From Octopus bimaculoides (Eukaryota): DNA of 39,075 nt. The DNA lies in assembly GCF_001194135.2 (NCBI RefSeq), contig NC_068998.1, positions 18,275,132-18,314,206 of the forward strand, read 5' to 3'. Shown here piece by piece: positions 1,646 to 36,963 of this stretch. The notes beneath the pieces were generated by a model. That model saw only the letters and a program-made list of their open reading frames with translations, did no database searches and was not told where the DNA came from. The translations under genes were made by a program, and so were the position numbers. Position 1 is the stretch's first letter. Each line of letters opens with the position of its first letter.

Positions 1646-1999
1646 ATTGTAAAGCACCGAAAATCTGTAAAACAAATTAAATAAAACAGAACACAAAGAT
1701 TAACATTTAAAAAATGTTTTTAATGGTTTCATTAGAGGAAGAAGGGCAGGAACCATGACCTTTTTTCAGGGCCTCTGAGACTGGTGAGAGAAAGAAAGAA
1801 AGTTATCCTCTCCCCATAGACCTGACTTGAATGCTTTCAATAGAAAGGAATTCATTGAAAGCACCCAGAAAAGAGCCAGGTAGTCGTAAAACCGGGTGAT
1901 GGAAGAAAGCATATTATGAAATATACAAATAAATGATAAATGAAACATTTACTACATTATTTAAATTTTAACAGATTTTGTCCTCATCTTGCTTGTTGC

Positions 2000-2043
2000 T
2001 AACACGTTTTGGCTGATGTACTCTCCAGCCTTCATCAGGTGTC
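2000..2043 (-). ncRNA. Degenerate minimal type I hammerhead motif, P1 left arm
   Basis: GACAC-CTGATGA-A-GGCTG..CAGCC-AAAAC-GTGTT; G12 changed to A and a 2-nt deletion at the cleavage site. Confidence 0.55.
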
Positions 2044-2333
2044 TTGGGGAAATTTCGAACCTGGGTTCTCATTCCTAAGGTATTTTTTCGATGTTATTAT
2101 TATTATTATTATTCAGGTCACTGCCTGGAATCAAACTTGGAATCTTGGGGTTAGTAGCCCGCGCTCTTAACCACTACACCCATGGGCATATAGTGTAGTG
2201 GTTAAGAGCACGGGCTACTAACCCCAAGATTCCGAGTTCGATTCCAAGCAGTGACCTGGATAATAATAATAATAATAACAATAACATCGAAAAATACTTT
2301 AGGAATGAGAATCCAAGTTTGAAATTTCCCCAA

Positions 2334-2376
2334 GACACCCGATGAAGGCTGGAGAGTATATCAGCCGAAATGTGTT
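2334..2376 (+). ncRNA. Degenerate minimal type I hammerhead motif, P1 right arm
   Basis: GACAC-CCGATGA-A-GGCTG..CAGCC-GAAAT-GTGTT; U4 changed to C, plus the same 2-nt deletion as the left arm. Confidence 0.55.
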
Positions 2377-2582
2377 AACAACAAAAAAGATGAGGACAAA
2401 ATCTGTCAAAAATGTCAAAAATGTAAATAATGTACATAATTCCTTATCTCTTAAATATAAAACTGTATGAAACATTTACTGTATAAATAATTTCTTTTTT
2501 TTTTCTTTGTGTCTTTTTGTCATTCTTTATATTCATTTTTAGCTGCAATTTAATGACTTTTGATACAAACATGTGTTAGTCG

Positions 2583-2773: not shown

Positions 2774-3836
2774 CTAGAAGGTTTCATCGCTAATTGACCT
2801 CAAAAGTGATGTGTCATTAGAATCGTTATCCTCAGCTTGTGAAATAGCTTCATTGTTTTTGTCTGATCGATTTGTTGCAGGATTGCAATGGTTATTGCTT
2901 GAAAGGGCTTCAAATGAAGAATAATCATTGTAAGTGTCTCCTTCAGATGAGTCTGATTCTTCCTCAATCAGTGATTCCAAGAGCTTCAATTTAGATGATC
3001 CTGTACTCTGTGGTGATGTCAGACTCATGGAATTGCCTTTAGGTTTCTCCTTAACAAAATTGTTATCAGATTGGTTGTGATTTTTACAAATAGCAGATTC
3101 TGAAACAGAATAGCGAATGGATTGATCATCTTCTTTACCTTGGGGGTAAGTTTCTTTTTCCTTTTCTTTAACCTTTTCTTTTCTGATACAAGATATTCTT
3201 TTTGTGCTTCCATTTTGCCTCATTTGGTAAATTTCTCCATCAGCTTCATCACATTCAGTCATTGTGCTTTTAACATGTGTTTGATCTGTTGGAGAAGTAG
3301 CACCATAACTTTTAGCACCATTAACTGTAGCTCCATTAATTCTAGCACCATTAACAGCACTGCTATTAACAGTGCCACCATGAACATCCTTTTTAGTATT
3401 ACTGCTATTTTTAGCATTACTGTCCTTTTTCAGAAGACTCACTTTTTGAACAATGTTTTCTATTATGCTTGATCTTGGTAAAGTTGTTTTTGAGAAAAAA
3501 TCATATTCTGGTAACTTAGAATTTTTGCTATGTTTGTTAGCTTCAAAAGCAGGAACATTTGAATCTGCATATAAATCTGGAGTGTGGGAAATAACAGAAC
3601 CATTTTGAAAAGCTTGAGACATGTTCTTAAGCATAGCTTCTTTGATTTTATTTTCTTTATCATCTGCTTGAAGTTTTTTTTTTAAATTACTCTGTGATTG
3701 GTGAGGATCCTGAATTGGATATATTGATTTTGCATCCAGAGATTCATTTGGCGGAAGTTCAAATGTGGAATTGAGATCTGACTTTTGATTATGTTGCACC
3801 TTAACATCTTTCTTGAAATTCTTTCTTAAATTATGA
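2774..3836 (-). CDS. CEP78: Probable terminal CEP78 exon; long low-complexity S/N/K/E-rich tail ending in TAG
   Basis: Strong acceptor ttttatttttatttttcag| at 3837. The phase-2 join to the previous exon gives TGT and stays in frame with ORF 2774-3799 (353 aa). Assigned by frame and position, not by recognisable homology. Confidence 0.75.
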
Positions 3837-5182: not shown

Positions 5183-5811
5183 AATTTTGTATAGAATCAA
5201 TGGCATTTGAATAGTATGCAAACAGTTGTTCAAAAGACATTCCACTGCAAACAGTTGCTCCAAAACAAAAGAAAAAACAAAAAAAAAACCCCCAAAAAAC
5301 AAGAAAAAACAAGAAAAAAAAACCCAACTCAACTGATTGAAATAACCATAGCTCTCAAATCGATATTTTATCAAATTATAGCAAATATTAAAATACTAAA
5401 AGAAGGTTATATTGTTATAGTTTATTAAAATATTTTTTATTAGCATACAAAAACCAATGCATTTTGTATGTGTGTATGTAATATTTATAGGTTTTAGACT
5501 GTAAACATAAATATGACACATGCACACATAGATATATCTATATGTGAAGTTGCTGACAATGAAAAGATTATATATAGTATAACATTTTCATAGAAAAATG
5601 TATTGTCATAATATTGGGCCCTAAAATCAGTGGGAAGCAATAAAAACAATTATCGTTTACAATATATATATATCAACAATGACTTTATTTGAAATTATAT
5701 CTAATTAGCCTCCATTAACCTGCCTCACACTGGCCCTGAGTCTATGATCTTAGCTTCCTGCTTTAAACTGATCTAAATTAAAACCTTCTATCAAAATTTC
5801 ATGCTAGTTAA

Positions 5812-6118
5812 TCATCGTCGTTTAACGTCCGCTTTCCATGCTAGCATGGGTTGGACGATTTGAGTGAGGACTGGTGAAACCAGATGGCTACACCAGGCTC
5901 CAATCTGATTTGGCAGAGTTTCTACAGCTGGATGCCCTTCCTAATGCCAACCACTCTGTGCCACCAGCACGAAGGCCAGTCAGGCGGTACTGGCGAAGGT
6001 CACGCTCGAAATGGTGTATTTTACGTGTCACCTGCGCAGGAGCCAGTCCATCGGCACTGGCAACGATCTCGCTTGAATGTCTTTTCACGTGCCAGGAAGG
6101 CAACGTTGGTAATGATCA
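5812..6118 (-). mobile_element. Family C, young copy
   Basis: Near-identical, in reverse, to 6950-7100 and 33870-34030. Confidence 0.85.
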
Positions 6119-6668: not shown

Positions 6669-7276
6669 TATTCTTTTACTCTTTCACTTGTTTGACTGTG
6701 GCCATGCTGGAGCACTGCCTTTAGTCAAACAAATCGACCCCAGAACTTATTCTTTGTAAACCTAGTACTTATCCTATCGCTCTCTGTTGCTGAACTGCTA
6801 AGTTATGGGGTATGTAAACACATCAACATTGGTTGTCAAGAAATGGTGGGGGAACAAACACAGACACACAAATATATATATATATATAGATATATATATA
6901 TATATATAATATATATATATATATAATATAACGTAAAAGCACCCACTACACTCTCTGAGTGGTTGGCGTTAGGAAGGGCATCCAGCTGTAGAAACTCTGC
7001 CAAATCAGACTGGAGCCTGGTGTTGCCATCCGGTTTCACCAGTCCTCAGTCAAATCGTCCAACCCATGCTAGCATGGAAAGCGGACGTTAAACGATGATG
7101 ATGATGATGATATATATACAATGAACTTCTTTTGGTTCCCATATGCCAAATCCACTCACAAGGTTTCAGTCGGCCCAAGGGTTTAGTAGAAGACACCTGT
7201 CCAAGGTGTCACACAATGGGACTGAACCCAGAACCATGTGGTTGGAAGCAAGCTTCTTACCACACAGCTACTCCTT
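6669..7276 (-). mobile_element. SINE family A, interrupted by an RTE 3' fragment in its (TA)n
   Basis: Tail 6669-6870, head 7115-7276, insertion 6933-7110. Confidence 0.8.
6933..7110 (+). mobile_element. Family C, young copy nested in a SINE A microsatellite
   Basis: CGTAAAAGCACCCACTACACTCTCTGAGTGGTTGGCGTTAGGAAGGGCATCCAGCTGTAG..GGACGTTAAAC(GAT)n. Confidence 0.88.
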
Positions 7277-10583: not shown

Positions 10584-11161
10584 ATCTTTTATCTTTTACT
10601 TGTTTCAGTCATTTGACCGTGGGCATGCTAGGGCACTGCCTTGAAGGGTGTTAGTCAAACAAATCAACCCCAGGACTTATTTTTTAAACCCTACTACTTA
10701 TTCTATTGGTCTCTTTTTCTTAACTTCTAAGTTAAGGGCATAACACACTAACACCGGTTGTTAAGTAGTGGCTGGTGACAAACACAGACACACACACACA
10801 CAGAACGGTTTTCTTTCAGTTTCTTATTTCTTTACTGCCCACAAGGGGCTAAACATAGAGGGGACAAACAAGGACAGACAAAGGGATTAAGTCGGTTACA
10901 TCGACCCCAGTGCGTAACTGGTACTTATTTAATCAACCCCGAAAGGATGAAAGGCAAAGTCGACCTCGGCGGAATTCGAACTCAGAACGTAGCAGCAGAT
11001 GAAATACCACTAAGCATTTCGCCCGGCGTGCTAACGTTTCTGCTAGCTCGCCGCCTTTTTCTTTCAGTTTCTGTCTACCAAATTCACTCACAAAGCTTTG
11101 GTCAGCCTAAGGCTATAGTATAAGACACTTGTGTAAGGTGCCATGCAATAGGACTGAACCC
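10584..11161 (-). mobile_element. SINE family A, interrupted by a family B SINE; runs into an N gap
   Basis: Tail 10584-10824, head part 11057-11161. Confidence 0.8.
10825..11056 (-). mobile_element. SINE family B (tRNA head plus GACTTTGCCTTTCATCCTTTCGGGGTCGATAAA central domain), intact copy
   Basis: 16-bp TSD TTTTCTTTCAGTTTCT at 10809-10824 and 11057-11072; A-box-like TGGCAGAAACG and B-box-like GAGTTCGAATTCC in sense. Confidence 0.9.
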
Positions 11162-11502
11162 NNNNNNNNNNNNNNNNNNNNNNNNNNNNNNNNNNNNNNN
11201 NNNNNNNNNNNNNNNNNNNNNNNNNNNNNNNNNNNNNNNNNNNNNNNNNNNNNNNNNNNNNNNNNNNNNNNNNNNNNNNNNNNNNNNNNNNNNNNNNNNN
11301 NNNNNNNNNNNNNNNNNNNNNNNNNNNNNNNNNNNNNNNNNNNNNNNNNNNNNNNNNNNNNNNNNNNNNNNNNNNNNNNNNNNNNNNNNNNNNNNNNNNN
11401 NNNNNNNNNNNNNNNNNNNNNNNNNNNNNNNNNNNNNNNNNNNNNNNNNNNNNNNNNNNNNNNNNNNNNNNNNNNNNNNNNNNNNNNNNNNNNNNNNNNN
11501 NN

Positions 11503-11503
<1 letters not shown>
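11162..11503. other. Assembly gap (N)
   Basis: Run of N. Confidence 1.

Positions 11504-11552
<49 letters not shown>
11504..11552. repeat. (AG)n microsatellite at the gap edge
   Basis: Direct reading. Confidence 0.95.
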
Positions 11553-12432: not shown

Positions 12433-12698
12433 CTGAAATACAGCACAGAGCAGATGATAAAATGTAATGAATACTGTGTAAATACATTGTTGTTCTCAAT
12501 TATTATTATTTATCTTGTTTAACACAGCAATTTCGCAGGAGAAAGTAACAAAGTGCCAGCTATCCACAACCAGTTGACTGAGGTAACACTCTTCATTCAG
12601 ACTTTGATAACTCTGTGAAGGATTTGTGCAGTTACAAGATCACCATGTTCTGCAGATGTTCTCTCTTCACGTTTCCCCCTATCTTCTTCTTATTATTA

Positions 12699-12935
12699 TT
12701 AAGGTGGTGAGCGGGCAGAAACAATTGCAAATTGGACAAAATGCTTAGTAGCATTACTTCTGGCTTTTGATGTTTTGAGTTCAAATCTCACTGAGGTCAA
12801 CTTTGCCTTTCATCCTTTCAGTGTTGATAAAATAAATAACAGTTGAACACTAGGGGTCGATGTAATCAACTAATCCACTTCCCTAAAATTGCTGGCCTTG
12901 TGACAAAATTTGAAACCATTATTATTTTTATTATC
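12699..12935 (+). mobile_element. SINE family B
   Basis: AAGGTGGTGAGCGGGCAGAA..CTTTGCCTTTCATCCTTTC..GAAACCATTATT. Confidence 0.8.
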
Positions 12936-12946
12936 AGTTGGTGAAT

Positions 12947-13141
12947 TAAGTGGCGAGCTGGCAGAATCGTTAACACACCAGGTAAAATGCTTACTTGCAT
13001 GTTGTCCATCACTACGCTCGGAGTTCAACTTTACCTTTCATCCTTTCAGGGTCAATGAAAAAAAGAACCAGTCAAGCACTGAGGTCGACTACTCCCACTC
13101 CCCAAATTCCAGGCCTTGTACCTATAGTAGAAAGGATTTTT
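12947..13141 (+). mobile_element. SINE family B, tail variant CCTATAGTAGAAAGG
   Basis: Bounded by AGTTGGTGAAT at 12936-12946 and 13142-13152. Confidence 0.8.
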
Positions 13142-13152
13142 AGTTGGTGAAT

Positions 13153-13373
13153 GAAGGTGTTGAGCTGGTAGAATTGTTAGCATGCTGGGCAAAATGCTTA
13201 ACAGCATTTCATTTATCTTTACGTTCTGAGTTCAAATTCCACTGAGGTTGACTTTACTTTTCATCCTCTCAGGGTTGATAAAATAATTACCAGTTGAGCA
13301 CTAGGGTCACTGTAATTGAGTTACCGCCTTCCCTGAAATTGCTAGCCTTGTGCCAAAGTTTGAAACCATTATT
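13153..13373 (+). mobile_element. SINE family B, tail variant TTTGAAACC
   Basis: Bounded by AGTTGGTGAAT at 13142-13152 and 13374-13384. Confidence 0.85.
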
Positions 13374-13544
13374 AGTTGGTGAATAACAATAAGGGAATGC
13401 CAATACAACTTAGGTAGAATAAATACCACTAGGTATTTTGTCAAATTCATCAATATATTAATTCAGTCATAACTGGTTCCAAGCTCATTTGAGAAAGGAA
13501 GAGAGTAGTAGGTATGGGGTTAGCAGTTCTACACTATTAATTTT

Positions 13545-14628: not shown

Positions 14629-15028
14629 GTTGTTGTTGTTGTTGTTGTTGTTGGCACTCCGTCGCTTGCGACGTCGAGGGTTCCAGTTGATCCAATCAAC
14701 GGAACAGCCTGCTCGTGAAATTAACGTGCAAGTGGCTGAGCACTCCACAGACACGTGTACCCTTAACGTAGTTCTCGGGGATATTCAGCGTGACACAGAG
14801 TGTGACAAGGCTGACCCTTTGAATTACAGGCACAACGGAAACAGGAAGTAAGAGTGAGAGAAAGTTGTGGTGAAAGAGTACAGTAGGGTTTGCCACCCCT
14901 GCTGGAGCCTCGTGGAGCTTTAGGTGCTTTTCGCTCAATAAACACTCACAACGCCCGGTCTGGGAATCGAAACCGCGATCCTATGATCGCGAGTCCGCTG
15001 CCCTAACCACTGGGCCATTGCACCTCCA
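14629..15028 (-). mobile_element. SINE family D (tRNA-derived head, ~380 bp, (CAA)n tail)
   Basis: Sense head TGGAGGTGCAATGGCCCAGTGGTTAGGGCAGCGG..GGTTTCGATTCCC; tail GAGTGCC(AAC)n. Confidence 0.9.
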
Positions 15029-15410: not shown

Positions 15411-15483
15411 TAATTATTTGGACTGAAAAATTCTTGTCACATCGCTTCATTATAACATGTGTTAACGTTAGTTTATGGAGCCC

Positions 15484-15705
15484 TAAAGGTGACAAGTTGG
15501 CAGAATCATTAGCATGCCAAGCAAAATGCTTAGTGGCATTTCGTCCATCCATATGTTCCAAGTTCAAATTCCGCCAAGGTTATCTTTGCCTTTCATCTTT
15601 CCAGGATCAATAAATTAAGTATCAGTTGAACATTGAGGTCAATGTCATCGACTTACCCCTTCTCCTGAAATTGCTGGCACGGTGTCAAAATTTGAAACCA
15701 TTATG
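15484..15705 (+). mobile_element. SINE family B
   Basis: Collinear with the other B copies. Confidence 0.8.
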
Positions 15706-15830
15706 TTATGGAGTCCTTGTATAAAGAACTAATATGTACATCACCATACCCAGAAATGGAACTGGAGAGATAGAAAAAGACATTGAAAATCAAAACATCA
15801 TATGTTAACATTAAACACGTGGAATCTTAC

Positions 15831-17034: not shown

Positions 17035-17411
17035 GTGGAGGCGCAATGGCCCAGTGGTTAGGGCAGCGGTCATAGGATCGCGGTTTCGATTCCCAGACCA
17101 GGTGTTGTGAGTGTTTATTGAGCGAAAACACCTAAAGCTCCACGAGGCTCCGGCAGGGGATGGTGGTGAACCCTGCTGTACTCTTTCACCATAACTTTCT
17201 CTCACTCTTACTTCCTGTTTCTGTTGTGCCTGTATTTCAAAGGGTCAGCCTTGTCAGACTGTGTCACGCTGAATATCCCTGAGAACTACGTTAAGGGTAC
17301 ACGTGTCTGTGGAGCTTTCAGCCACTTGCACGTTAATTTCACGAGCAGGCTGTTCCGTTGATCGGATCAACTGGAACCCTCGACGTCGTAAGCGACAGAG
17401 TGCCAACAACA
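17035..17411 (+). mobile_element. SINE family D; part of a larger TSD-bounded unit extending to 17571
   Basis: 43-nt exact inverted match of 17318-17360 with 14697-14739. Confidence 0.9.
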
Positions 17412-17769
17412 ATATTAATGGTATTTATTTGAAATGTGCTGCAAAGAAAAGTGAGACCCGGTGCTTTTGCACTTGGAACATATACTGGCGAATTTAAAAT
17501 ACAAGTCATCTACTTTTGTGTGTTACTGCTCTTGTTTTCACCTCGACGTCGTAAGCAATGGAGTGCCAACAACATTGAAGGTAACATTGTCTATGCAATG
17601 TTTTCATTGAATGTTGCATTGGTCTATGCCCTGCCTATATTGCAGGAAACCTCTCTGCAGAGCCTTCACTGAAAGTGATACTGTCCCTGGAATATCTATA
17701 CTGAAGGGGATAGTTTCCATGTACTGTCTACACAGATGGTGACATTATCTATGGATGCTGTAAGACAGC

Positions 17770-19302: not shown

Positions 19303-19414
19303 TTTCATTTCAAGTTTTCATTTGCTATTTGCAAAACCCATGTAAAAAAAAAAAATTGCTATTAGACAAAATATAACTTTCAGGCTTATTTTTGATAGAA
19401 TAAAATTTTTTTAA

Positions 19415-19579
19415 GGAGTGGCTGTGTGGTAAGTAGCTTGCTTACAAACCACATGGTTCCGGGTTCAGTCCCACTGCGTAGCATCTTGGGCAAGCGTCTT
19501 CTACTATAGCCTCGGGCCGACCAAAGCCTTGTGAGTGGATTTGGTAGATGGAAACTGAAAGAAGCCCGTCGTATATATG

Positions 19580-22442: not shown

Positions 22443-22832
22443 TGTTGATGTTGTTGGCACTCCATCGTTTACAATGTCGAAGGTTCCAGTTGATCCGATC
22501 AAGGAACAGCCTGCTCGTGAAATTAATGTGCAAGTAGCTGAGCACTCCATAGACATGTGTACCCTTAACGTAGTTCTCGGAGATATTCAGCGGGACACAG
22601 TGTGACAAGGCTGACCCTTTGAATTACAGGTACAACGGAAACAGGAAGAAAGAGTGAGAGAAGGTTGTGGTAGAAGAGTACAGCAGAATTCACCAGCATC
22701 CCCTGCCGGAGCCTCGTGGGGCTTTTAGGTGTTTTCGCTCAATAAACACTCACAATGCCTGGTCTGGGAATCGAAACCGCGATCCTATGACCGCAAATCC
22801 GCTGCCCTAACCACTGGGCCATTGCGCCTTCA
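22443..22832 (-). mobile_element. SINE family D
   Basis: 12-bp TSD CAGATTTTGTGT at 22431-22442 and 22833-22844. Confidence 0.9.
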
Positions 22833-25088: not shown

Positions 25089-25821
25089 TGAAAAATGCGA
25101 GCATGGAAAGTAATATTCTTAAGATTATAAATCTGGAAAAGTACAGGACAAGTTATTACACCTGGAAAAGTATAGGACAAGCTATTACTTCTAGTAAAGT
25201 AAAGAATAAGAAACTTTTTACTTAAAATATTGCAGCAAAGAATGCCAGTTCTTCTAATTTATCACTCTTTATAGTTTTCATCTTTTAAATTTATTGTACA
25301 AAATTGTTCAGCTAATTTGTAAGTTTGTCTAATTAGTCACTTTTTCTGTATTTAAGGTAGTAAATTAGCCAAATTCTACTTAACCCTTTTGTTACCGTAT
25401 TTATTTTGAGATGCTCTGTGTTTCTTTCAATTATTTTAAATATAACAAAGAATTTAGTAAAATAACATAGTTATCATAAAGCTAGTGTTACGAACATAAA
25501 TTGTGACTAAGGCTTAGTGGTATATTTTAATGCAAAACTTATGAAATCAAGACATTTGTACTATGGAGCCAGAGCCAGTTTTGGTTGGGTTAGTAACGAA
25601 AGGGTTAAATAAGTATAGTGTTATTTGTAAACTATAATAAAATAATTTTTAATATTCAAATTTTAATTTTAGCTGCAATATTTTAAGTAAAAAAGTTTCT
25701 TATTCTTTACTTTACTAGAAGTAATAGCTTGTCCTATACTTTTCCAGGTGTAATAACTTGTCCTGTACTTTTCCAGGTTTATAATCTTAAGAATATTATT
25801 TTTCATGTTAGCATTTTTTCA
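25089..25821. repeat. Long inverted repeat (arms 25089-25236 and 25672-25821); foldback/MITE-like, superfamily unassigned
   Basis: 87-nt exact inverted match (left arm 25133-25219). Each arm has tandem 29-bp units CTGGAAAAGTA(C/T)AGGACAAG(T/C)TATTAC. No TSD found. Confidence 0.85.
25384..25604. mobile_element. piggyBac-type MITE, 221 bp, second family
   Basis: TTAA at 25380-25383 and 25605-25608; TIRs CCCTTTTGTTAC and GTAACGAAAGGG (11/12). Confidence 0.85.
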
Positions 25822-33102: not shown

Positions 33103-33139
33103 CATTAATGAGTGAGAGATTATCATCATTATTATTATT
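32999..33139. repeat. (ATT)n tracts with a duplicated AATGAGTGAGAG spacer
   Basis: Direct reading; the spacer occurs near 33053 and 33107. Confidence 0.9.
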
Positions 33140-33372
33140 CTAGCAGAATTGTTAGCATGCTGGGCAAAATGCTTAGCAGTATTTCGTCTGTCTTTATGTT
33201 CTGCACTCAAATTCTGCCAAGGTCGACTTTGCCTTTCACCCTTTTGGGATTGATAAAAAAAGTACCAGTCAAGTACTGGAGTCGATGTAACTGACTTAAC
33301 CCCTCCCACGAAATTGCTGGCCTTGTGTCAAAATTTGAAACCATTATTATTATTATTATTATTATTATTATA
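33140..33372 (+). mobile_element. SINE family B
   Basis: Embedded between (ATT)n tracts. Confidence 0.85.
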
Positions 33373-33481
33373 GATGTCACACAGTATCGTGAGGTTGTTG
33401 ATTGAAGATATTGATATTGTGTCTACTGAGGGTTTGTACTGTTTGTCAAGTCACAATTATTATTATTATTATTATTATTGT

Positions 33482-33697
33482 AAGCATGCCAAACAAAATG
33501 TTTAGTGGCATTTTATATACCTTTATGTTCTGAATTCAAATTCTGCCAAGGTCAACTTTGTCTTTCGTCCTTTCAGGGTTAATAAAACAAGTACCAGTTA
33601 AGCATTGGGGAGGAGGAGGCTTGAGGTAATTGATTTACCCCTCCCCAAACTTGCTGGTCTTGTGCCAAAATTTGAAATCATTATTATTATTATCATC
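33482..33697 (+). mobile_element. SINE family B, 5' truncated
   Basis: Starts directly after (ATT)n and ends in (ATT)n. Confidence 0.8.
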
Positions 33698-33705
33698 ATT
33701 GCCAG

Positions 33706-34032
33706 TACCGCCTGACTGGCCTTCGTAGGATTTTCGAGCGAGATTGTTGCTAGTGCCCCTGGACTGGCTCTTGTGCGGGTGGCACATAAAATACACCATT
33801 TTGAGCGTGGCCATTGCCAGTACCGCCTGACTGGCCTTCGTGCGGGTGACACGTAAAAGCACCCACTACACTCTCTGAGTGGTTGGCGTTAGGAAGGGTA
33901 TTCCAGCTGTAGAAACTCTGCCAAATCAGATTGGAGCCTGGTGTTGCCATCCGGTTTCACCAGTTCTCAGTCAAATCGTCCAACCCATGCTAGCATGGAA
34001 AGCGGACGTTAAACGACGACGATGATGATGAT
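33706..34032 (+). mobile_element. Family C, young copy with upstream hairpin repeat units
   Basis: ATTGCCAGTACCGCCTGACTGGCCTTCGT occurs twice, then the conserved 3' end and (GAT)n. Confidence 0.88.
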
Positions 34033-34035
34033 TAT

Positions 34036-34276
34036 TAAGGCGGTGAGCTGGCAGAGTCGTTAGCACGCTGGGCAAAATGCTTAGCAGTATTTTGCCCGTT
34101 GCTACATTCTGAGTTCAAATTTCGCCAAGATTGACTTTGCATTTCATCCTTTTGGGGTCGATAAATTAAGTACCAGTTGAGTACTGGGGTTGATATAATC
34201 AACTATTCCCCTCCCCCAAATTTCAGGCCTTGTGCCTATAGTAGAAAGGATTATTATTATTATTATTATTATTATT
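34036..34276 (+). mobile_element. SINE family B
   Basis: AAGGCGGTGAGCTGGCAGAG..CCTATAGTAGAAAGG(ATT)n. Confidence 0.88.
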
Positions 34277-34512
34277 AGGCAGTGAGATGGCAGAAGCATT
34301 AACATGCCGGGCAAAATGCTTAGCGGCATTTCGTCCATCTTTACATACTGAGTCCAAAATTATGCCAAGGTGAACTTTGCCTTTCATCTTTTCAGGATCA
34401 ATAAAAAAAAGGACCAATTGAGCCCTGGGGTTGGTGTAATCAACTAGCACCTGCTTCCCTCAAACATGCTGGCCTTGTGCCAAAACTTGAAATCATCATT
34501 ATTATTATTATT
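34277..34512 (+). mobile_element. SINE family B
   Basis: Starts in the (ATT)n tail of the previous copy. Confidence 0.85.
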
Positions 34513-35237
34513 TCTTCTGTATTTTTCTCATTCTCTCTCACTTAAATTTTTCGTAGTCATACTTAAAAAAACACAAAAATAGTTTTAAGAATAATATCTG
34601 GTGTATTTACGAAAAAAGGGTGGTGGGGTAAAATAGTATATACTTCAGTATAATGTCTAGATGTAGATGAACAAGCAACACTTAATTGTTTTATATTCAC
34701 TTTTACTATGTTACCACCAAGATTTTTTTAAAATTTATTTGGTTATCTTTTTTTTTAAATTTGAATATTTCTATATCTGTTGATGCAATACCCAGCCACC
34801 CACCCAAAAAAGAAAAAAGAAAAGAAAAAATAAGAAAGAAGGAATGAACAAAAAAGACAGGGATTCTGAATGCCATATTGTAGGCAACCTCTAATGATGG
34901 GAACTGTAAAAAAATAAAAAAATAAAAAACTGATACAAAGTAGAGGTAACTCTTCAATCCTGCTACAAACTAAATGTCTGCTTGGCAAATGCCTTTCAGA
35001 TCCGTTTCTGTTAAAAATACAGAGATATCTATTGCTTGGGATGTTTCTTTCGTTGTTGATTTTAGGTATAGGTCAGTCATTCTGGTTGAGAGCTTATAGC
35101 TAGTTGATTATATAAATTATCTGGTGCTGGTGGTACAATAAAAACACTTCTGTTCTATATTTAAGAAATGAGGAATTATGTACATTTTTTACATTATTTC
35201 CATTTGACGGATGTTTGTCCTCATCTTGTTTGTTGTT

Positions 35238-35283
35238 AACCCAACGTTTCAGCTGATATACCCTCCAGCCTTCATCAGGTGTC
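35238..35283 (-). ncRNA. Minimal type I hammerhead ribozyme motif with intact core, P2 left arm
   Basis: GACAC-CTGATGA-A-GGCTG-gagggtatat-CAGCT-GAAA-C-GTT-GGGTT. Palindromic AACGTT in place of stem III; stem I has one mismatch. Confidence 0.7.
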
Positions 35284-35490
35284 TTGGGGAAATTTCGAAC
35301 CTGGGTTCTCATTCCTAAGGTATTTTTCGATGTTATTATTATTATTATTCAGGTCACTGCTTGGAATTGAACTCAAAATCTTGGGGTTAGTAGCCTGCGC
35401 TTTTAACCACTATGCCATATGCCCATGGGTGTAATGGTTAAGAGCACAGGCTACTAACCCCAAGTTTCCGAGTTTGATTCCAAGCAGTGA

Positions 35491-35558
<68 letters not shown>

Positions 35559-35605
35559 TCGAAAAATACTTTAGGAATGAGAACCCAGGTTCAAAATTTC
35601 CCCAA

Positions 35606-35651
35606 GACACCTGATGAAGGCTAGAGGGTATATCAGCCAAAACGTTGTGTT
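35606..35651 (+). ncRNA. Degenerate minimal hammerhead motif, P2 right arm
   Basis: GACAC-CTGATGA-A-GGCTA..CAGCC-AAAA-C-GTT-GTGTT. Stem I GACAC/GTGTT is intact; G12 changed to A. Confidence 0.6.
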
Positions 35652-35807
35652 AACAAAAAACAAGATGAGGATAAATATCTGTCAAATGTAAATAATGTAA
35701 ATGAAAATACCTCTTATCTACATCATAAAAACTGGTGATTTTTTTAAGACTCATGTAACTCATGACGACCTTGAATTCTTATTTTTAAGAATGAAACTAG
35801 AATGTTA

Positions 35808-36609: not shown

Positions 36610-36699
36610 CTGTAAATAAAATAAAACAAAACACAATAAAATGATGTCTGTAAATATATTGTGAGGTGTGACAGGTTAATAACTTCTGAATGTAAGGCA

Positions 36700-36908
36700 G
36701 CAAGCTAGCCGAATCTTTAGCATGCCAGGCATAATACTTAGTGGCATTTTGTCTGTCTTTATGTGCTGGTTCAAATTCCACCAGAGTCAACGTTACCTTT
36801 CATCCATTTGGGGGTCAATAAAACAAGTACCAGAATGGGGTCGATGCAATCAATTTTCAGCCCTTCCCAAAATTTGCTGGCCTTGTGCCAAAATTTGATC
36901 CAATAATT
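36700..36908 (+). mobile_element. SINE family B
   Basis: About 90 bp upstream (in transcript direction) of the CEP78 LRR exon acceptor. Confidence 0.75.
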
Positions 36909-36963
36909 TCTGGATGTATTGAAATGAATTGATAAAAGTCTACAATTATTAGAGAATTTATTC

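What the first reader, a model, noticed from the sequence alone, without database searches (positions are those of the whole stretch)
35137..35714. Second independent copy with the same asymmetric architecture: identical 11-nt spacer, one long arm and one short arm
Seen: P2 lies 33 kb from P1 with different flanks and its own degenerate TSD (12/15). Its spacer ATATGCCCATG is the exact reverse complement of the P1 spacer. In both copies the short arm stops at ...AAATAATGT(A). The long arm carries an extra ~35-45 nt (CATAATTCCTCATCTCTTAAATATAGAAC-like), on the same side relative to spacer orientation. Known (recalled): Penelope pLTRs show a 30-40 nt 3' tail missing from the partner repeat. Inference: the palindrome has a reproducible, mechanistically fixed structure and is not a random local fold-back.
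Basis: partly seen in the sequence, partly recalled or inferred. Interest (0 to 1): 0.7.

Follow-up and report, generated by a model that had tools for sequence, protein, structure and literature searches.

The report
Inverted-dimer SINE with Penelope-type hallmarks
The palindrome is a real mobile element in an octopus-like genome: a short tRNA-promoter retroelement with a decayed hammerhead-ribozyme motif that inserts as a head-to-head double copy, as expected if Penelope-type enzymes copy RNA from both cut DNA strands.

Summary
P2 (35152-35699) and P1 (1954-2466) are two copies of one roughly 0.5 kb palindromic element. They lie in opposite orientations and have unrelated flanks. Both have the same 11-nt centre, the same short-arm end (…AATAATGT) and a 33-39 nt tail on the arm next to the same side of the centre.

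A related species' contig (L001) lacks P1 exactly and carries the 14-bp target once. The whole palindrome therefore went in as one event with a target-site duplication.

Each arm, read from centre outwards, is a SINE. It has pol III A and B boxes, an (AAT)n stretch, and a body whose CpG-restored consensus fits the Penelope-type minimal hammerhead. It ends in a 3' stem-loop and has no poly(A). The 11-nt "spacer" is the 5' end of the full-length arm.

This matches published Penelope-like element (PLE) footprints: an inverted partner copy, a 30-40 bp tail at one end only, and in vitro priming from both strands at two internal start sites.

Best reading, at about 0.65: a PLE-mobilised SINE inserted by dual-strand target-primed reverse transcription.

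Limits: only two DNA copies were available, no autonomous partner was found, and the ribozyme motif is decayed and untested.

It is a new member of a known kind, of moderate interest.

The parts
35137..35151 (.). P2 target-site duplication, left copy (AATAAAAACACTTCT)
   Evidence: Matches 35700-35714 at 12 of 15 and abuts both element ends. Chance is 0.001-0.003.
35152..35416 (-). P2 long arm. This is the full-length SINE copy; its sense strand is the minus strand, read from centre outwards.
   Evidence: Four-arm alignment.
35152..35190 (-). P2 tail, the 39 nt that the short arm lacks. It includes the 3' strand of the terminal stem (35166-35174).
   Evidence: The same tail is seen in the P1 long arm and is encoded in the Octopus bimaculoides protein P0001.
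35238..35283 (-). Hammerhead-like motif in the P2 long arm (C11.1 changed to U, one helix I mismatch)
35363..35417 (-). Pol III A box plus B box of the P2 long arm. The first A-box base is the last spacer base.
   Evidence: The composite pattern matches with 2 mismatches. Chance is 0.01 per window.
35417..35427 (-). 11-nt centre (CATGGGCATAT on the minus strand). It is the 5' end of the full-length arm, at tRNA-like positions -3 to 8.
   Evidence: Exact reverse complement of 2181-2191. A-box register.
35428..35699 (+). P2 short arm. This is the inverted partner copy; it lacks the first 11 nt and the tail, and carries an expanded (AAT)n at 35494-35556.
35606..35651 (+). Hammerhead-like motif in the P2 short arm (G12 changed to A by CpG decay)
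35700..35714 (.). P2 target-site duplication, right copy (AATGAAAATACCTCT)
1940..1953 (.). P1 target-site duplication, left copy (ATGAAACATTTACT)
   Evidence: Perfect 14-bp repeat of 2467-2480. It is present once in the empty site of L001.
1954..2180 (-). P1 short arm
2181..2191 (+). P1 11-nt centre (CATGGGCATAT)
2192..2466 (+). P1 long arm. It contains the A/B boxes (2191-2245), the hammerhead-like motif (2334-2379), the stem (2388-2396 with 2441-2449) and the tail (2434-2466).
2467..2480 (.). P1 target-site duplication, right copy

Best explanation
P1 and P2 are insertions of a non-autonomous, SINE-type retroelement in an octopus-like genome.

The unit RNA (inferred) is a pol III transcript with these parts, in order:
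- a tRNA-like head with A and B boxes, starting at the 11-nt 'spacer';
- an (AAU)n stretch;
- a roughly 160-nt body carrying a Penelope-type minimal hammerhead motif;
- a 3' stem-loop, with no poly(A).

The proposed mechanism (inferred) is mobilisation by a Penelope-like element (PLE) reverse transcriptase with a GIY-YIG endonuclease:
1. The enzyme makes staggered nicks 14-15 bp apart in AT-rich DNA.
2. Both 3'-OH ends prime reverse transcription at internal RNA sites.
3. One cDNA starts at the distal site (...UAUAGAAC) and runs to the RNA 5' end. This gives the long arm with its tail and the 11 nt.
4. The other cDNA starts about 33 nt upstream (...AAUAAUGU) and joins the first head-to-head, 11 nt short of the 5' end. 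This gives the short arm.
5. Fill-in produces the TSD.

Shown here: a single-event insertion with a TSD; identical architecture in two independent copies; promoter-like boxes; the hammerhead motif in the consensus.

Inferred: the PLE enzyme, priming from both strands, and pol III transcription.
For: 1. Empty site. Contig L001 from a related species aligns to window 4058-2467 and then to 1953-1680. It skips exactly 1954-2466 and carries the 14-bp target once.

2. Same architecture twice. The two copies have unrelated flanks and opposite orientations, yet share the identical 11-nt centre, short-arm end and tail side. The P2 TSD has a chance probability of 0.001-0.003.

3. Termini are not inverted repeats. 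The tail is on one side only, and the TSDs are 14 and 15 bp. This fits target-primed reverse transcription rather than a transposase.

4. Promoter. The A+B box composite at tRNA spacing matches both long arms only when the last spacer base is included. Chance is 0.01 per window. The ancestral sense arms lack T runs of 4 or more, while the antisense strand has several.

5. Hammerhead motif. The CpG-restored consensus is GACAC-CUGAUGA-A-GGCUGG(8-nt loop)UCAGCC-GAA-ACGU-U|GUGUU. It passes a strict minimal-hammerhead descriptor that gives 0 hits in the window on both strands and 0 hits in 20 Mb of simulated sequence. It shows every emergent PLE hammerhead trait listed in PMC4209133: an extra base between A9 and G10.1, a G10.1-C11.1 pair, a 6-bp helix II, a 5-bp helix I and palindromic 15.2-16.2. 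That paper also reports paired minimal hammerheads 100-700 bp apart on opposite strands.

6. Published PLE footprints. These include an inverted partner copy plus a 30-40 bp tail at one end only (PMC8557442). The anole PLE protein cleaves and extends both strands and starts reverse transcription at two adjacent internal sites; the stretch between them is the tail. Its targets are AT-rich (PMC11167929).

7. Arm relationships. Two indels are shared by both arms of a copy and differ between copies. No indel is specific to arm type. Each palindrome was therefore made from one source.

8. Possible partners exist. Penelope families are abundant and recently active in Octopus (PMC13282606).
Against: - Only two DNA copies could be examined, plus one protein-level trace of a third. 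No further copies could be retrieved.
- No autonomous PLE sharing the 3' module was identified, and the window holds no RT or GIY-YIG coding sequence.
- No present-day arm passes the hammerhead descriptor.
- Rfam found no hammerhead or tRNA, and ARAGORN found no tRNA.
- U4 of CUGAUGA sits at a CpG-type column: one arm has C and three have U. By my rough estimate the ancestral U is only about 70% likely.
- The direct pseudo-LTR tandem typical of PLEs is absent.
- In vitro the two start sites were used equally on both strands, which does not by itself predict the fixed long/short pairing seen here.
- The 3' stem-loop is only weakly better than shuffled sequence (z = -1.76).
Confidence: 0.65

Rival explanations
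1. Master palindrome. The inverted dimer arose once, and the whole palindrome is the unit that is transcribed and retrotransposed. Alternatively, several palindromic masters exist whose arms are homogenised by gene conversion. The fixed centre would then be inherited rather than re-created at each insertion.
For: The centre and arm ends are identical in both copies, which inheritance explains trivially. All four arms are equidistant at about 90% identity.
Against: - Two indels are shared by both arms within a copy but differ between copies. This needs extra gene conversion.
- The only promoter-like elements point outwards from the centre.
- The antisense arms contain several pol III terminator T-runs.
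- A full transcript would be a dsRNA hairpin of about 250 bp, a poor template for reverse transcription. Its 5' end at ...ACATTATTT would need an external promoter that is not carried along.
Confidence: 0.15
2. A LINE-mobilised SINE, with a stringent-type partner such as RTE or CR1 that recognises the 3' stem-loop. The inverted duplication would come from a twin-priming-like side reaction, and the hammerhead resemblance would be incidental.
For: TSDs of 14-15 bp and a 3' stem-loop are also typical of LINE/SINE target-primed reverse transcription. RTE, CR1 and Dong-R4 LINEs are abundant in octopus.
Against: - Classical twin priming inverts a different part of one RNA. Here both arms cover the same roughly 225 nt.
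- There is no poly(A) or microsatellite 3' tail, unlike the other SINEs in the window, which end in (ATT)n.
- The 33-39 nt one-sided tail and the minimal-hammerhead features are PLE hallmarks.
- The hammerhead motif has a chance rate below 5e-8 per nt.
Confidence: 0.12
3. A DNA transposon derivative, either a MITE or a foldback element with long terminal inverted repeats.
For: The overall shape is a palindrome flanked by direct repeats.
Against: - The extreme termini are not inverted repeats, because a 33-39 nt tail is on one side only.
- The TSDs are 14 and 15 bp, and I recall no eukaryotic transposase superfamily with a TSD that long.
- The arms are outward-facing pol III SINE units.
Confidence: 0.03
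4. Chance or local artefact: a random fold-back, an assembly artefact, a segmental duplication of one locus, or two independent SINE insertions that happen to lie head-to-head.
For: None specific. Palindromes can be assembly artefacts.
Against: - There are two copies with unrelated flanks, each with its own TSD.
- There is a clean empty site in another species.
- The junctions are identical and there are no internal TSDs.
- The arms have diverged by about 10%, so this is not a recent artefact.
Confidence: 0.01

Closest known systems
Penelope-like element (PLE) insertion architecture (Craig et al. 2021, PMC8557442; Frangieh et al. 2024, PMC11167929)
   Same: - An inverted partner copy abuts the 5' end of a full-length copy.
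- A 30-40 bp tail is present at one end only.
- The target is AT-rich and the TSD is variable.
- The 3' ends are defined by internal reverse-transcription start sites, not by poly(A).
- A hammerhead lies upstream of the start sites.
- The distances here from the predicted cleavage site to the two ends are about 51 and 81-84 nt. In the anole PLE one start site lies about 85-92 nt from the cleavage site.
   Different: - There is no RT or GIY-YIG ORF and no direct pseudo-LTR tandem.
- The unit is only about 270 nt and is headed by a tRNA-like pol III promoter.
- The partner copy is nearly full length, lacking only 11 nt at the 5' end, rather than variably truncated.
PLE-type minimal hammerhead ribozymes (Cervera & de la Pena 2014, PMC4209133; Lunse et al. 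2017, cited but not read)
   Same: - CUGAUGA and GAAA cores.
- An extra base between A9 and G10.1, and a G10.1-C11.1 pair.
- A long helix II (6 bp) and a short helix I (5 bp).
- A helix III reduced to A-CG-U with palindromic 15.2-16.2.
- Occurrence as pairs on opposite strands a few hundred bp apart.
   Different: - The motif is seen only in the CpG-restored consensus; all four present-day arms are mutated.
- Activity is untested.
- It was not detected by the Rfam hammerhead models.
SMalpha, the SINE-like element of Schistosoma mansoni with an active hammerhead (Ferbeyre et al. 1998, as cited in PMC8490949; the pol III boxes are from my recollection)
   Same: It is a short non-coding retroelement that combines a pol III-type promoter with a type I hammerhead, in a genome rich in PLEs.
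   Different: - SMalpha has a canonical hammerhead rather than a minimal one.
- Sequence homology was not tested.
- No head-to-head dimer with a one-sided tail was mentioned for SMalpha in the papers read here.
Animal non-LTR retrozymes (Cervera & de la Pena 2020, as cited; bioRxiv 10.64898/2026.07.22.740005)
   Same: They are non-autonomous, hammerhead-bearing and proposed to be mobilised by PLEs.
   Different: Retrozymes are head-to-tail tandem arrays that are processed into circular RNAs. Here there are dispersed inverted dimers with a tRNA-like head and a minimal hammerhead.
L1 twin priming inversions (recalled: Ostertag & Kazazian 2001)
   Same: Both target strands prime cDNA synthesis, giving an inverted segment joined head-to-head.
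   Different: Twin priming yields non-overlapping parts of one RNA, with poly(A) at one end. Here there are two near-complete copies of the same sequence and no poly(A).

Membership tests
PLE-type minimal hammerhead (min-HHR) | Conserved cores CUGANGA and GAAA in type I order | tested here: met
   Met in the consensus of the four arms. Three of four arms keep CUGAUGA and two of four keep GAAA; the losses are at CpG sites. Ancestral U4 is uncertain, at about 70%.
PLE-type minimal hammerhead (min-HHR) | Extra nucleotide between A9 and G10.1; G10.1-C11.1 pair; helix II of 6-8 bp; helix I of 4-5 bp; palindromic 15.2-16.2; H17 | tested here: met
   The consensus has an extra A, GGCUGG/UCAGCC (6 bp), GACAC/GUGUU (5 bp), A-CG-U, and U17. 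The features are as listed in PMC4209133. The descriptor gives 0 hits in 20 Mb of simulated sequence.
PLE-type minimal hammerhead (min-HHR) | Self-cleavage, as a dimer or protein-assisted | not testable with these tools
   Needs in vitro transcription and a cleavage assay.
PLE-type minimal hammerhead (min-HHR) | Match to curated hammerhead covariance models | tested here: not met
   No hammerhead hit at E of 10 or below in Rfam 15. This is expected for helix-III-less variants, but it is still a negative result.
Penelope-like element insertion (non-autonomous passenger) | Inverted partner copy abutting the 5' end of the full copy | tested here: met
   Present in both P1 and P2.
Penelope-like element insertion (non-autonomous passenger) | 30-40 bp tail at only one end | tested here: met
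   The tail is 33 nt in P1 and 39 nt in P2, on the long arm only.
Penelope-like element insertion (non-autonomous passenger) | Direct partial tandem (pseudo-LTR) | tested here: not met
   There is no direct repeat of the unit at either locus.
Penelope-like element insertion (non-autonomous passenger) | Sequence similarity of the 3' module to an autonomous PLE of the same genome | not testable with these tools
   No octopus genome or TE library is available here. There is no RT or GIY-YIG coding sequence in the window.
tRNA-derived SINE (SINE2) | Internal pol III A and B boxes at tRNA spacing | tested here: met
   TRGCNNAGTGG-N33-GGTTCGANNCC matches both long arms with 2 mismatches. Chance is 0.01 per window.
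tRNA-derived SINE (SINE2) | Recognisable tRNA cloverleaf | tested here: not met
   ARAGORN found none and the Rfam tRNA model gave no hit.
tRNA-derived SINE (SINE2) | LINE-type 3' end (poly(A) or simple-repeat tail) | tested here: not met
   The ends are ...TATAGAAC and ...AATAATGT. The (AAT)n stretch is internal.
tRNA-derived SINE (SINE2) | Insertion flanked by a target-site duplication, with an empty site in a relative | tested here: met
MITE / foldback DNA transposon | Inverted repeats reaching both termini, and a short TSD of fixed length | tested here: not met
   The termini differ by a one-sided 33-39 nt tail, and the TSDs are 14 and 15 bp.
Non-LTR retrozyme | Head-to-tail tandem units, each with a hammerhead | tested here: not met
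   Only inverted pairs are present, with no tandem arrangement.

The most novel reading that the evidence does not exclude
The fixed asymmetry may be an in vivo record of an ordered, coupled two-strand reaction by a dimeric PLE enzyme. The cDNA that starts at the distal site always reaches the RNA 5' end. The cDNA that starts at the proximal site always stops 11 nt short and jumps onto the 3' end of the first cDNA. Both cDNAs may copy the same RNA molecule, which would explain why the arms of one copy share indels. If so, 11 nt acts as a molecular ruler, either the enzyme footprint or the last stable hybrid. In that case this small SINE family would be a genome-wide readout of how Penelope-type integration is completed, which is still unresolved.
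Probability: 0.25. Interest if true: 0.7.

Novelty: new member of a known kind. Interest (0 to 1): 0.5.

Why it matters
How Penelope-like elements integrate is still described as undefined (PMC8557442), including how they produce their inverted and tandem structures and the tail. The only biochemical clue is in vitro: both strands are cut and extended, from two internal start sites (PMC11167929).

In a roughly 0.5 kb passenger element, both arms, both outer ends and the inner junction survive intact. An empty site is also available. Together these provide a compact natural record of that reaction.

If the family is abundant in octopus genomes, tabulating the arm combinations and junction offsets across copies would test the dual-priming model directly.

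It would also help classify some of the many 'unclassified SINEs' of octopus genomes. It would link dispersed minimal hammerheads to a defined pol III-driven carrier.

Tried and rejected
- Known RNA families: Rfam at gathering and E-value thresholds, and ARAGORN, found no hammerhead and no tRNA. The only hits were microRNA-like hairpins caused by the palindrome itself.
- More copies in the window: none beyond the four arms.
- More copies elsewhere:
  - Two exact-pattern scans each of the metagenome and viral collections found nothing.
  - Translated arm ORFs found only one Octopus bimaculoides UniRef entry, P0001. Its DNA is not on record.
  - An alignment of centre-spanning ORFs found nothing.
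- Empty site for P2: not obtainable, because the protein searches were exhausted.
- Complementarity or identity between the tail and the target flanks: none beyond chance.
- Microhomology models for the 11-nt junction, using the CATG and CATATG palindromes and snap-back priming: each was one base off the observed junction, so I left this unresolved.
- Rejected explanations: MITE or foldback, segmental duplication, two chance SINE insertions, and classical twin priming (reasons under the rivals).
- Pfam scan of the ten longest window ORFs: no RT or endonuclease.

Full report
**Setting.** The window is AT-rich eukaryotic DNA (GC 0.25-0.42). It is packed with tRNA-derived SINEs that end in (ATT)n and with microsatellites. 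A translated arm ORF hits an Octopus bimaculoides UniRef entry, so the source is an octopus or a close relative.

**Observation.** P2 is a palindrome with arms 35188-35349/35540-35701 (92%) and 35333-35412/35432-35511 (90%). P1 lies at 1954-2466.
- The 11-nt centres, 2181-2191 CATGGGCATAT and 35417-35427 ATATGCCCATG, are exact reverse complements.
- When the four arms are aligned from centre outwards, both short arms stop at ...AAATAATGT.
- Both long arms continue with ACATAATTCCTYATYTCTTAAATATARAAC. This tail is 33 nt in P1 and 39 nt in P2, where it includes a private 10-nt duplication.
- The long arm is always the one joined to the CATAT side of the centre.
- Similarity between the two loci ends at the element borders, and there are no other copies in the window.
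- P1 has a perfect 14-bp TSD at 1940-1953 and 2467-2480. P2 has a 12-of-15 TSD at 35137-35151 and 35700-35714, reached by 0.1-0.3% of control position pairs.

**Empty site.** A 341-aa ORF next to P1 (2774-3799, minus strand) has a 72%-identical counterpart in a Logan assembly.
- Its 1.9-kb contig L001 aligns to window 4058-2467 at 81% and then directly to 1953-1680 at 89%.
- The two alignments overlap by the 14 target bases.
- With P1 and one TSD copy removed, the joined window flanks are colinear with L001, which carries AGTAAATATTTCAT once.
- The whole 513-bp palindrome is therefore one insertion event with a 14-bp TSD.
- Precise loss in the other lineage cannot be formally excluded. It would not change the insertion signature.

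**Anatomy of an arm.**
- *Head.* The composite TRGCNNAGTGG-N33-GGTTCGANNCC (pol III A and B boxes at tRNA spacing) matches both long arms with 2 mismatches. It does so only if the last spacer base is the first A-box base. The chance expectation is 0.01 per window, and the other hits are bona fide tRNA-SINEs.
- *Centre.* That register places tRNA-like position 1 at spacer base 4, and the expected pol III start at or near spacer base 1. The 'spacer' is therefore the 5' end of the full-length arm, and the short arm is a copy lacking those 11 nt.
- *Terminators.* The sense strands lack T runs of 4 or more, except for one derived run in P2. The antisense strands have several.
- *No cloverleaf.* ARAGORN and Rfam do not call a tRNA.
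- *Body.* After an internal (AAT)n comes a body whose consensus reads GACAC CUGAUGA A GGCUGG-AGAGUAUA-UCAGCC GAA ACGU U|GUGUU. Ten CpG-type columns were restored to obtain it.

**Hammerhead motif.**
- The consensus passes a strict minimal type I hammerhead descriptor. That descriptor finds nothing in the real window on either strand and nothing in 20 Mb of composition-matched simulated sequence.
- It has every trait that Cervera and de la Pena reported as emergent in PLE hammerheads. These are an unpaired base between A9 and G10.1, a G10.1-C11.1 pair, a long helix II, a short helix I and palindromic 15.2-16.2. They also noted paired motifs 100-700 bp apart on opposite strands.
- No present-day arm passes the descriptor. 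Both short arms have G12 changed to A. The P2 long arm has C11.1 changed to U and a helix I mismatch. Both P1 arms have a 3-nt deletion, and the P1 long arm also has U4 changed to C.
- U4 lies in a CpG-type column, so the ancestral U is probable rather than certain.
- Rfam gives no hammerhead hit.

**3' module.**
- AGAUGAGGA pairs with UCCUCAUCU in the tail, forming a 9-bp stem.
- The short-arm end lies in the loop and the long-arm end lies 14 nt beyond the stem.
- The only changes in the tail strand are C to U, which keep G.U pairs.
- The fold is only modestly better than shuffled sequence (z = -1.76).
- The O. bimaculoides protein P0001 encodes the same tail without the private duplications of P1 and P2. 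It also has the longer GUUGUR form of helix I.

**Relationship of the arms.** All six arm pairs are 89-91% identical.
- The informative substitutions split 2:2:2 and are mostly at CpG sites.
- Two indels (GT---G versus GTTGKG, and AAA-ATC versus AAAYATC) are shared by both arms of a copy and differ between copies. No indel is specific to arm type.
- Each palindrome was therefore built from one source sequence.
- This favours re-creation of the structure at each insertion over a single master palindrome with diverged arms. Gene conversion within palindromic masters cannot be excluded with two copies.

**Mechanism.** The geometry is what target-primed reverse transcription from both nicked strands predicts.
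- With staggered nicks leaving 3' ends that both carry the target, each 3'-OH extends a cDNA from the RNA 3' region towards its 5' end.
- The two copies then meet head-to-head, with the TSD outside them.
- Frangieh et al. showed that a purified anole PLE protein cleaves and extends both strands. It starts reverse transcription at two adjacent internal sites that are not homologous to the target. The genomic 'tail' is the stretch between them, and the targets are AT-rich.
- Craig et al. describe the inverted partner copy and the one-sided 30-40 bp tail as general PLE features.
- Penelope families are abundant and recently active in Octopus.
- I therefore read the family as a pol III-driven SINE that borrows a PLE's 3' recognition module, including its hammerhead, and is inserted as an inverted dimer.
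- How the junction forms is unresolved. It is most simply an end-to-end jump of the short-arm cDNA from RNA position 12 onto the 3' end of the full-length cDNA. The microhomology and snap-back models I tried were one base off.
- The tail shows no complementarity to the flanks.

**Rivals.** The alternatives are a master palindrome (0.15), a LINE partner with a twin-priming-like reaction (0.12), a DNA transposon (0.03), and artefact or chance (0.01). The reasons are given in their entries.

**Novelty and verdict.** Every component is already known:
- the PLE inverted copies and tail;
- minimal hammerheads dispersed in animal genomes;
- the hammerhead-bearing SINE-like SMalpha of Schistosoma;
- PLE-dependent retrozymes.

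I found no description of a cephalopod tRNA-headed hammerhead SINE or of this precise dimer. It may exist unrecognised in repeat libraries.

It is a new member of a known kind. Its value is as a compact in vivo footprint of the dual-strand reaction.

Noticed in passing
window 2774-3799 (-); L001 290-1348: A 341-aa Ser/Asn-rich ORF with no Pfam domain is conserved at 72% amino-acid identity in a related species (Logan SRR11869391). It is probably a real coding exon. P1 lies 293 nt beyond its stop codon.
   Followed up: partly
window 25091-25818: A MITE-like unit with 129-nt terminal inverted repeats (96%) around a 470-nt AT-rich core. It is unrelated to P1 and P2.
   Followed up: partly
window 5811-5956 / 6957-7102, and 33902-34023: A 146-nt inverted pair (96%) lies 1 kb apart, with a third copy 28 kb away. 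This is another repeat family in an inverted arrangement. I did not check it for a TSD or a tail.
   Followed up: no
window 14963-15017 (-), 17039-17093 (+), 22767-22821 (-): A second tRNA-derived SINE family has near-perfect A and B boxes. Its copies form long inverted pairs (17134-17356 with 22503-22725 at 90%; 14645-14798 with 17259-17412 at 95%).
   Followed up: no
window ~11160-11530: An assembly gap (run of N) is flanked by a (GA/CT)n simple repeat.
   Followed up: no
window 12690-13390, 15480-15710, 33130-34520, 36690-36920: There are clusters of octopus-type SINEs ending in (ATT)n. Several lie in tandem within 33.1-34.5 kb, just upstream of P2. Their tail type contrasts with the tail-less ends of P1 and P2.
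   Followed up: no
L001 1-24 / window 19414-19437: The 5' end of the related-species contig starts inside a copy of another window SINE family. That family therefore predates the split of the two species, whereas P1 does not.
   Followed up: no
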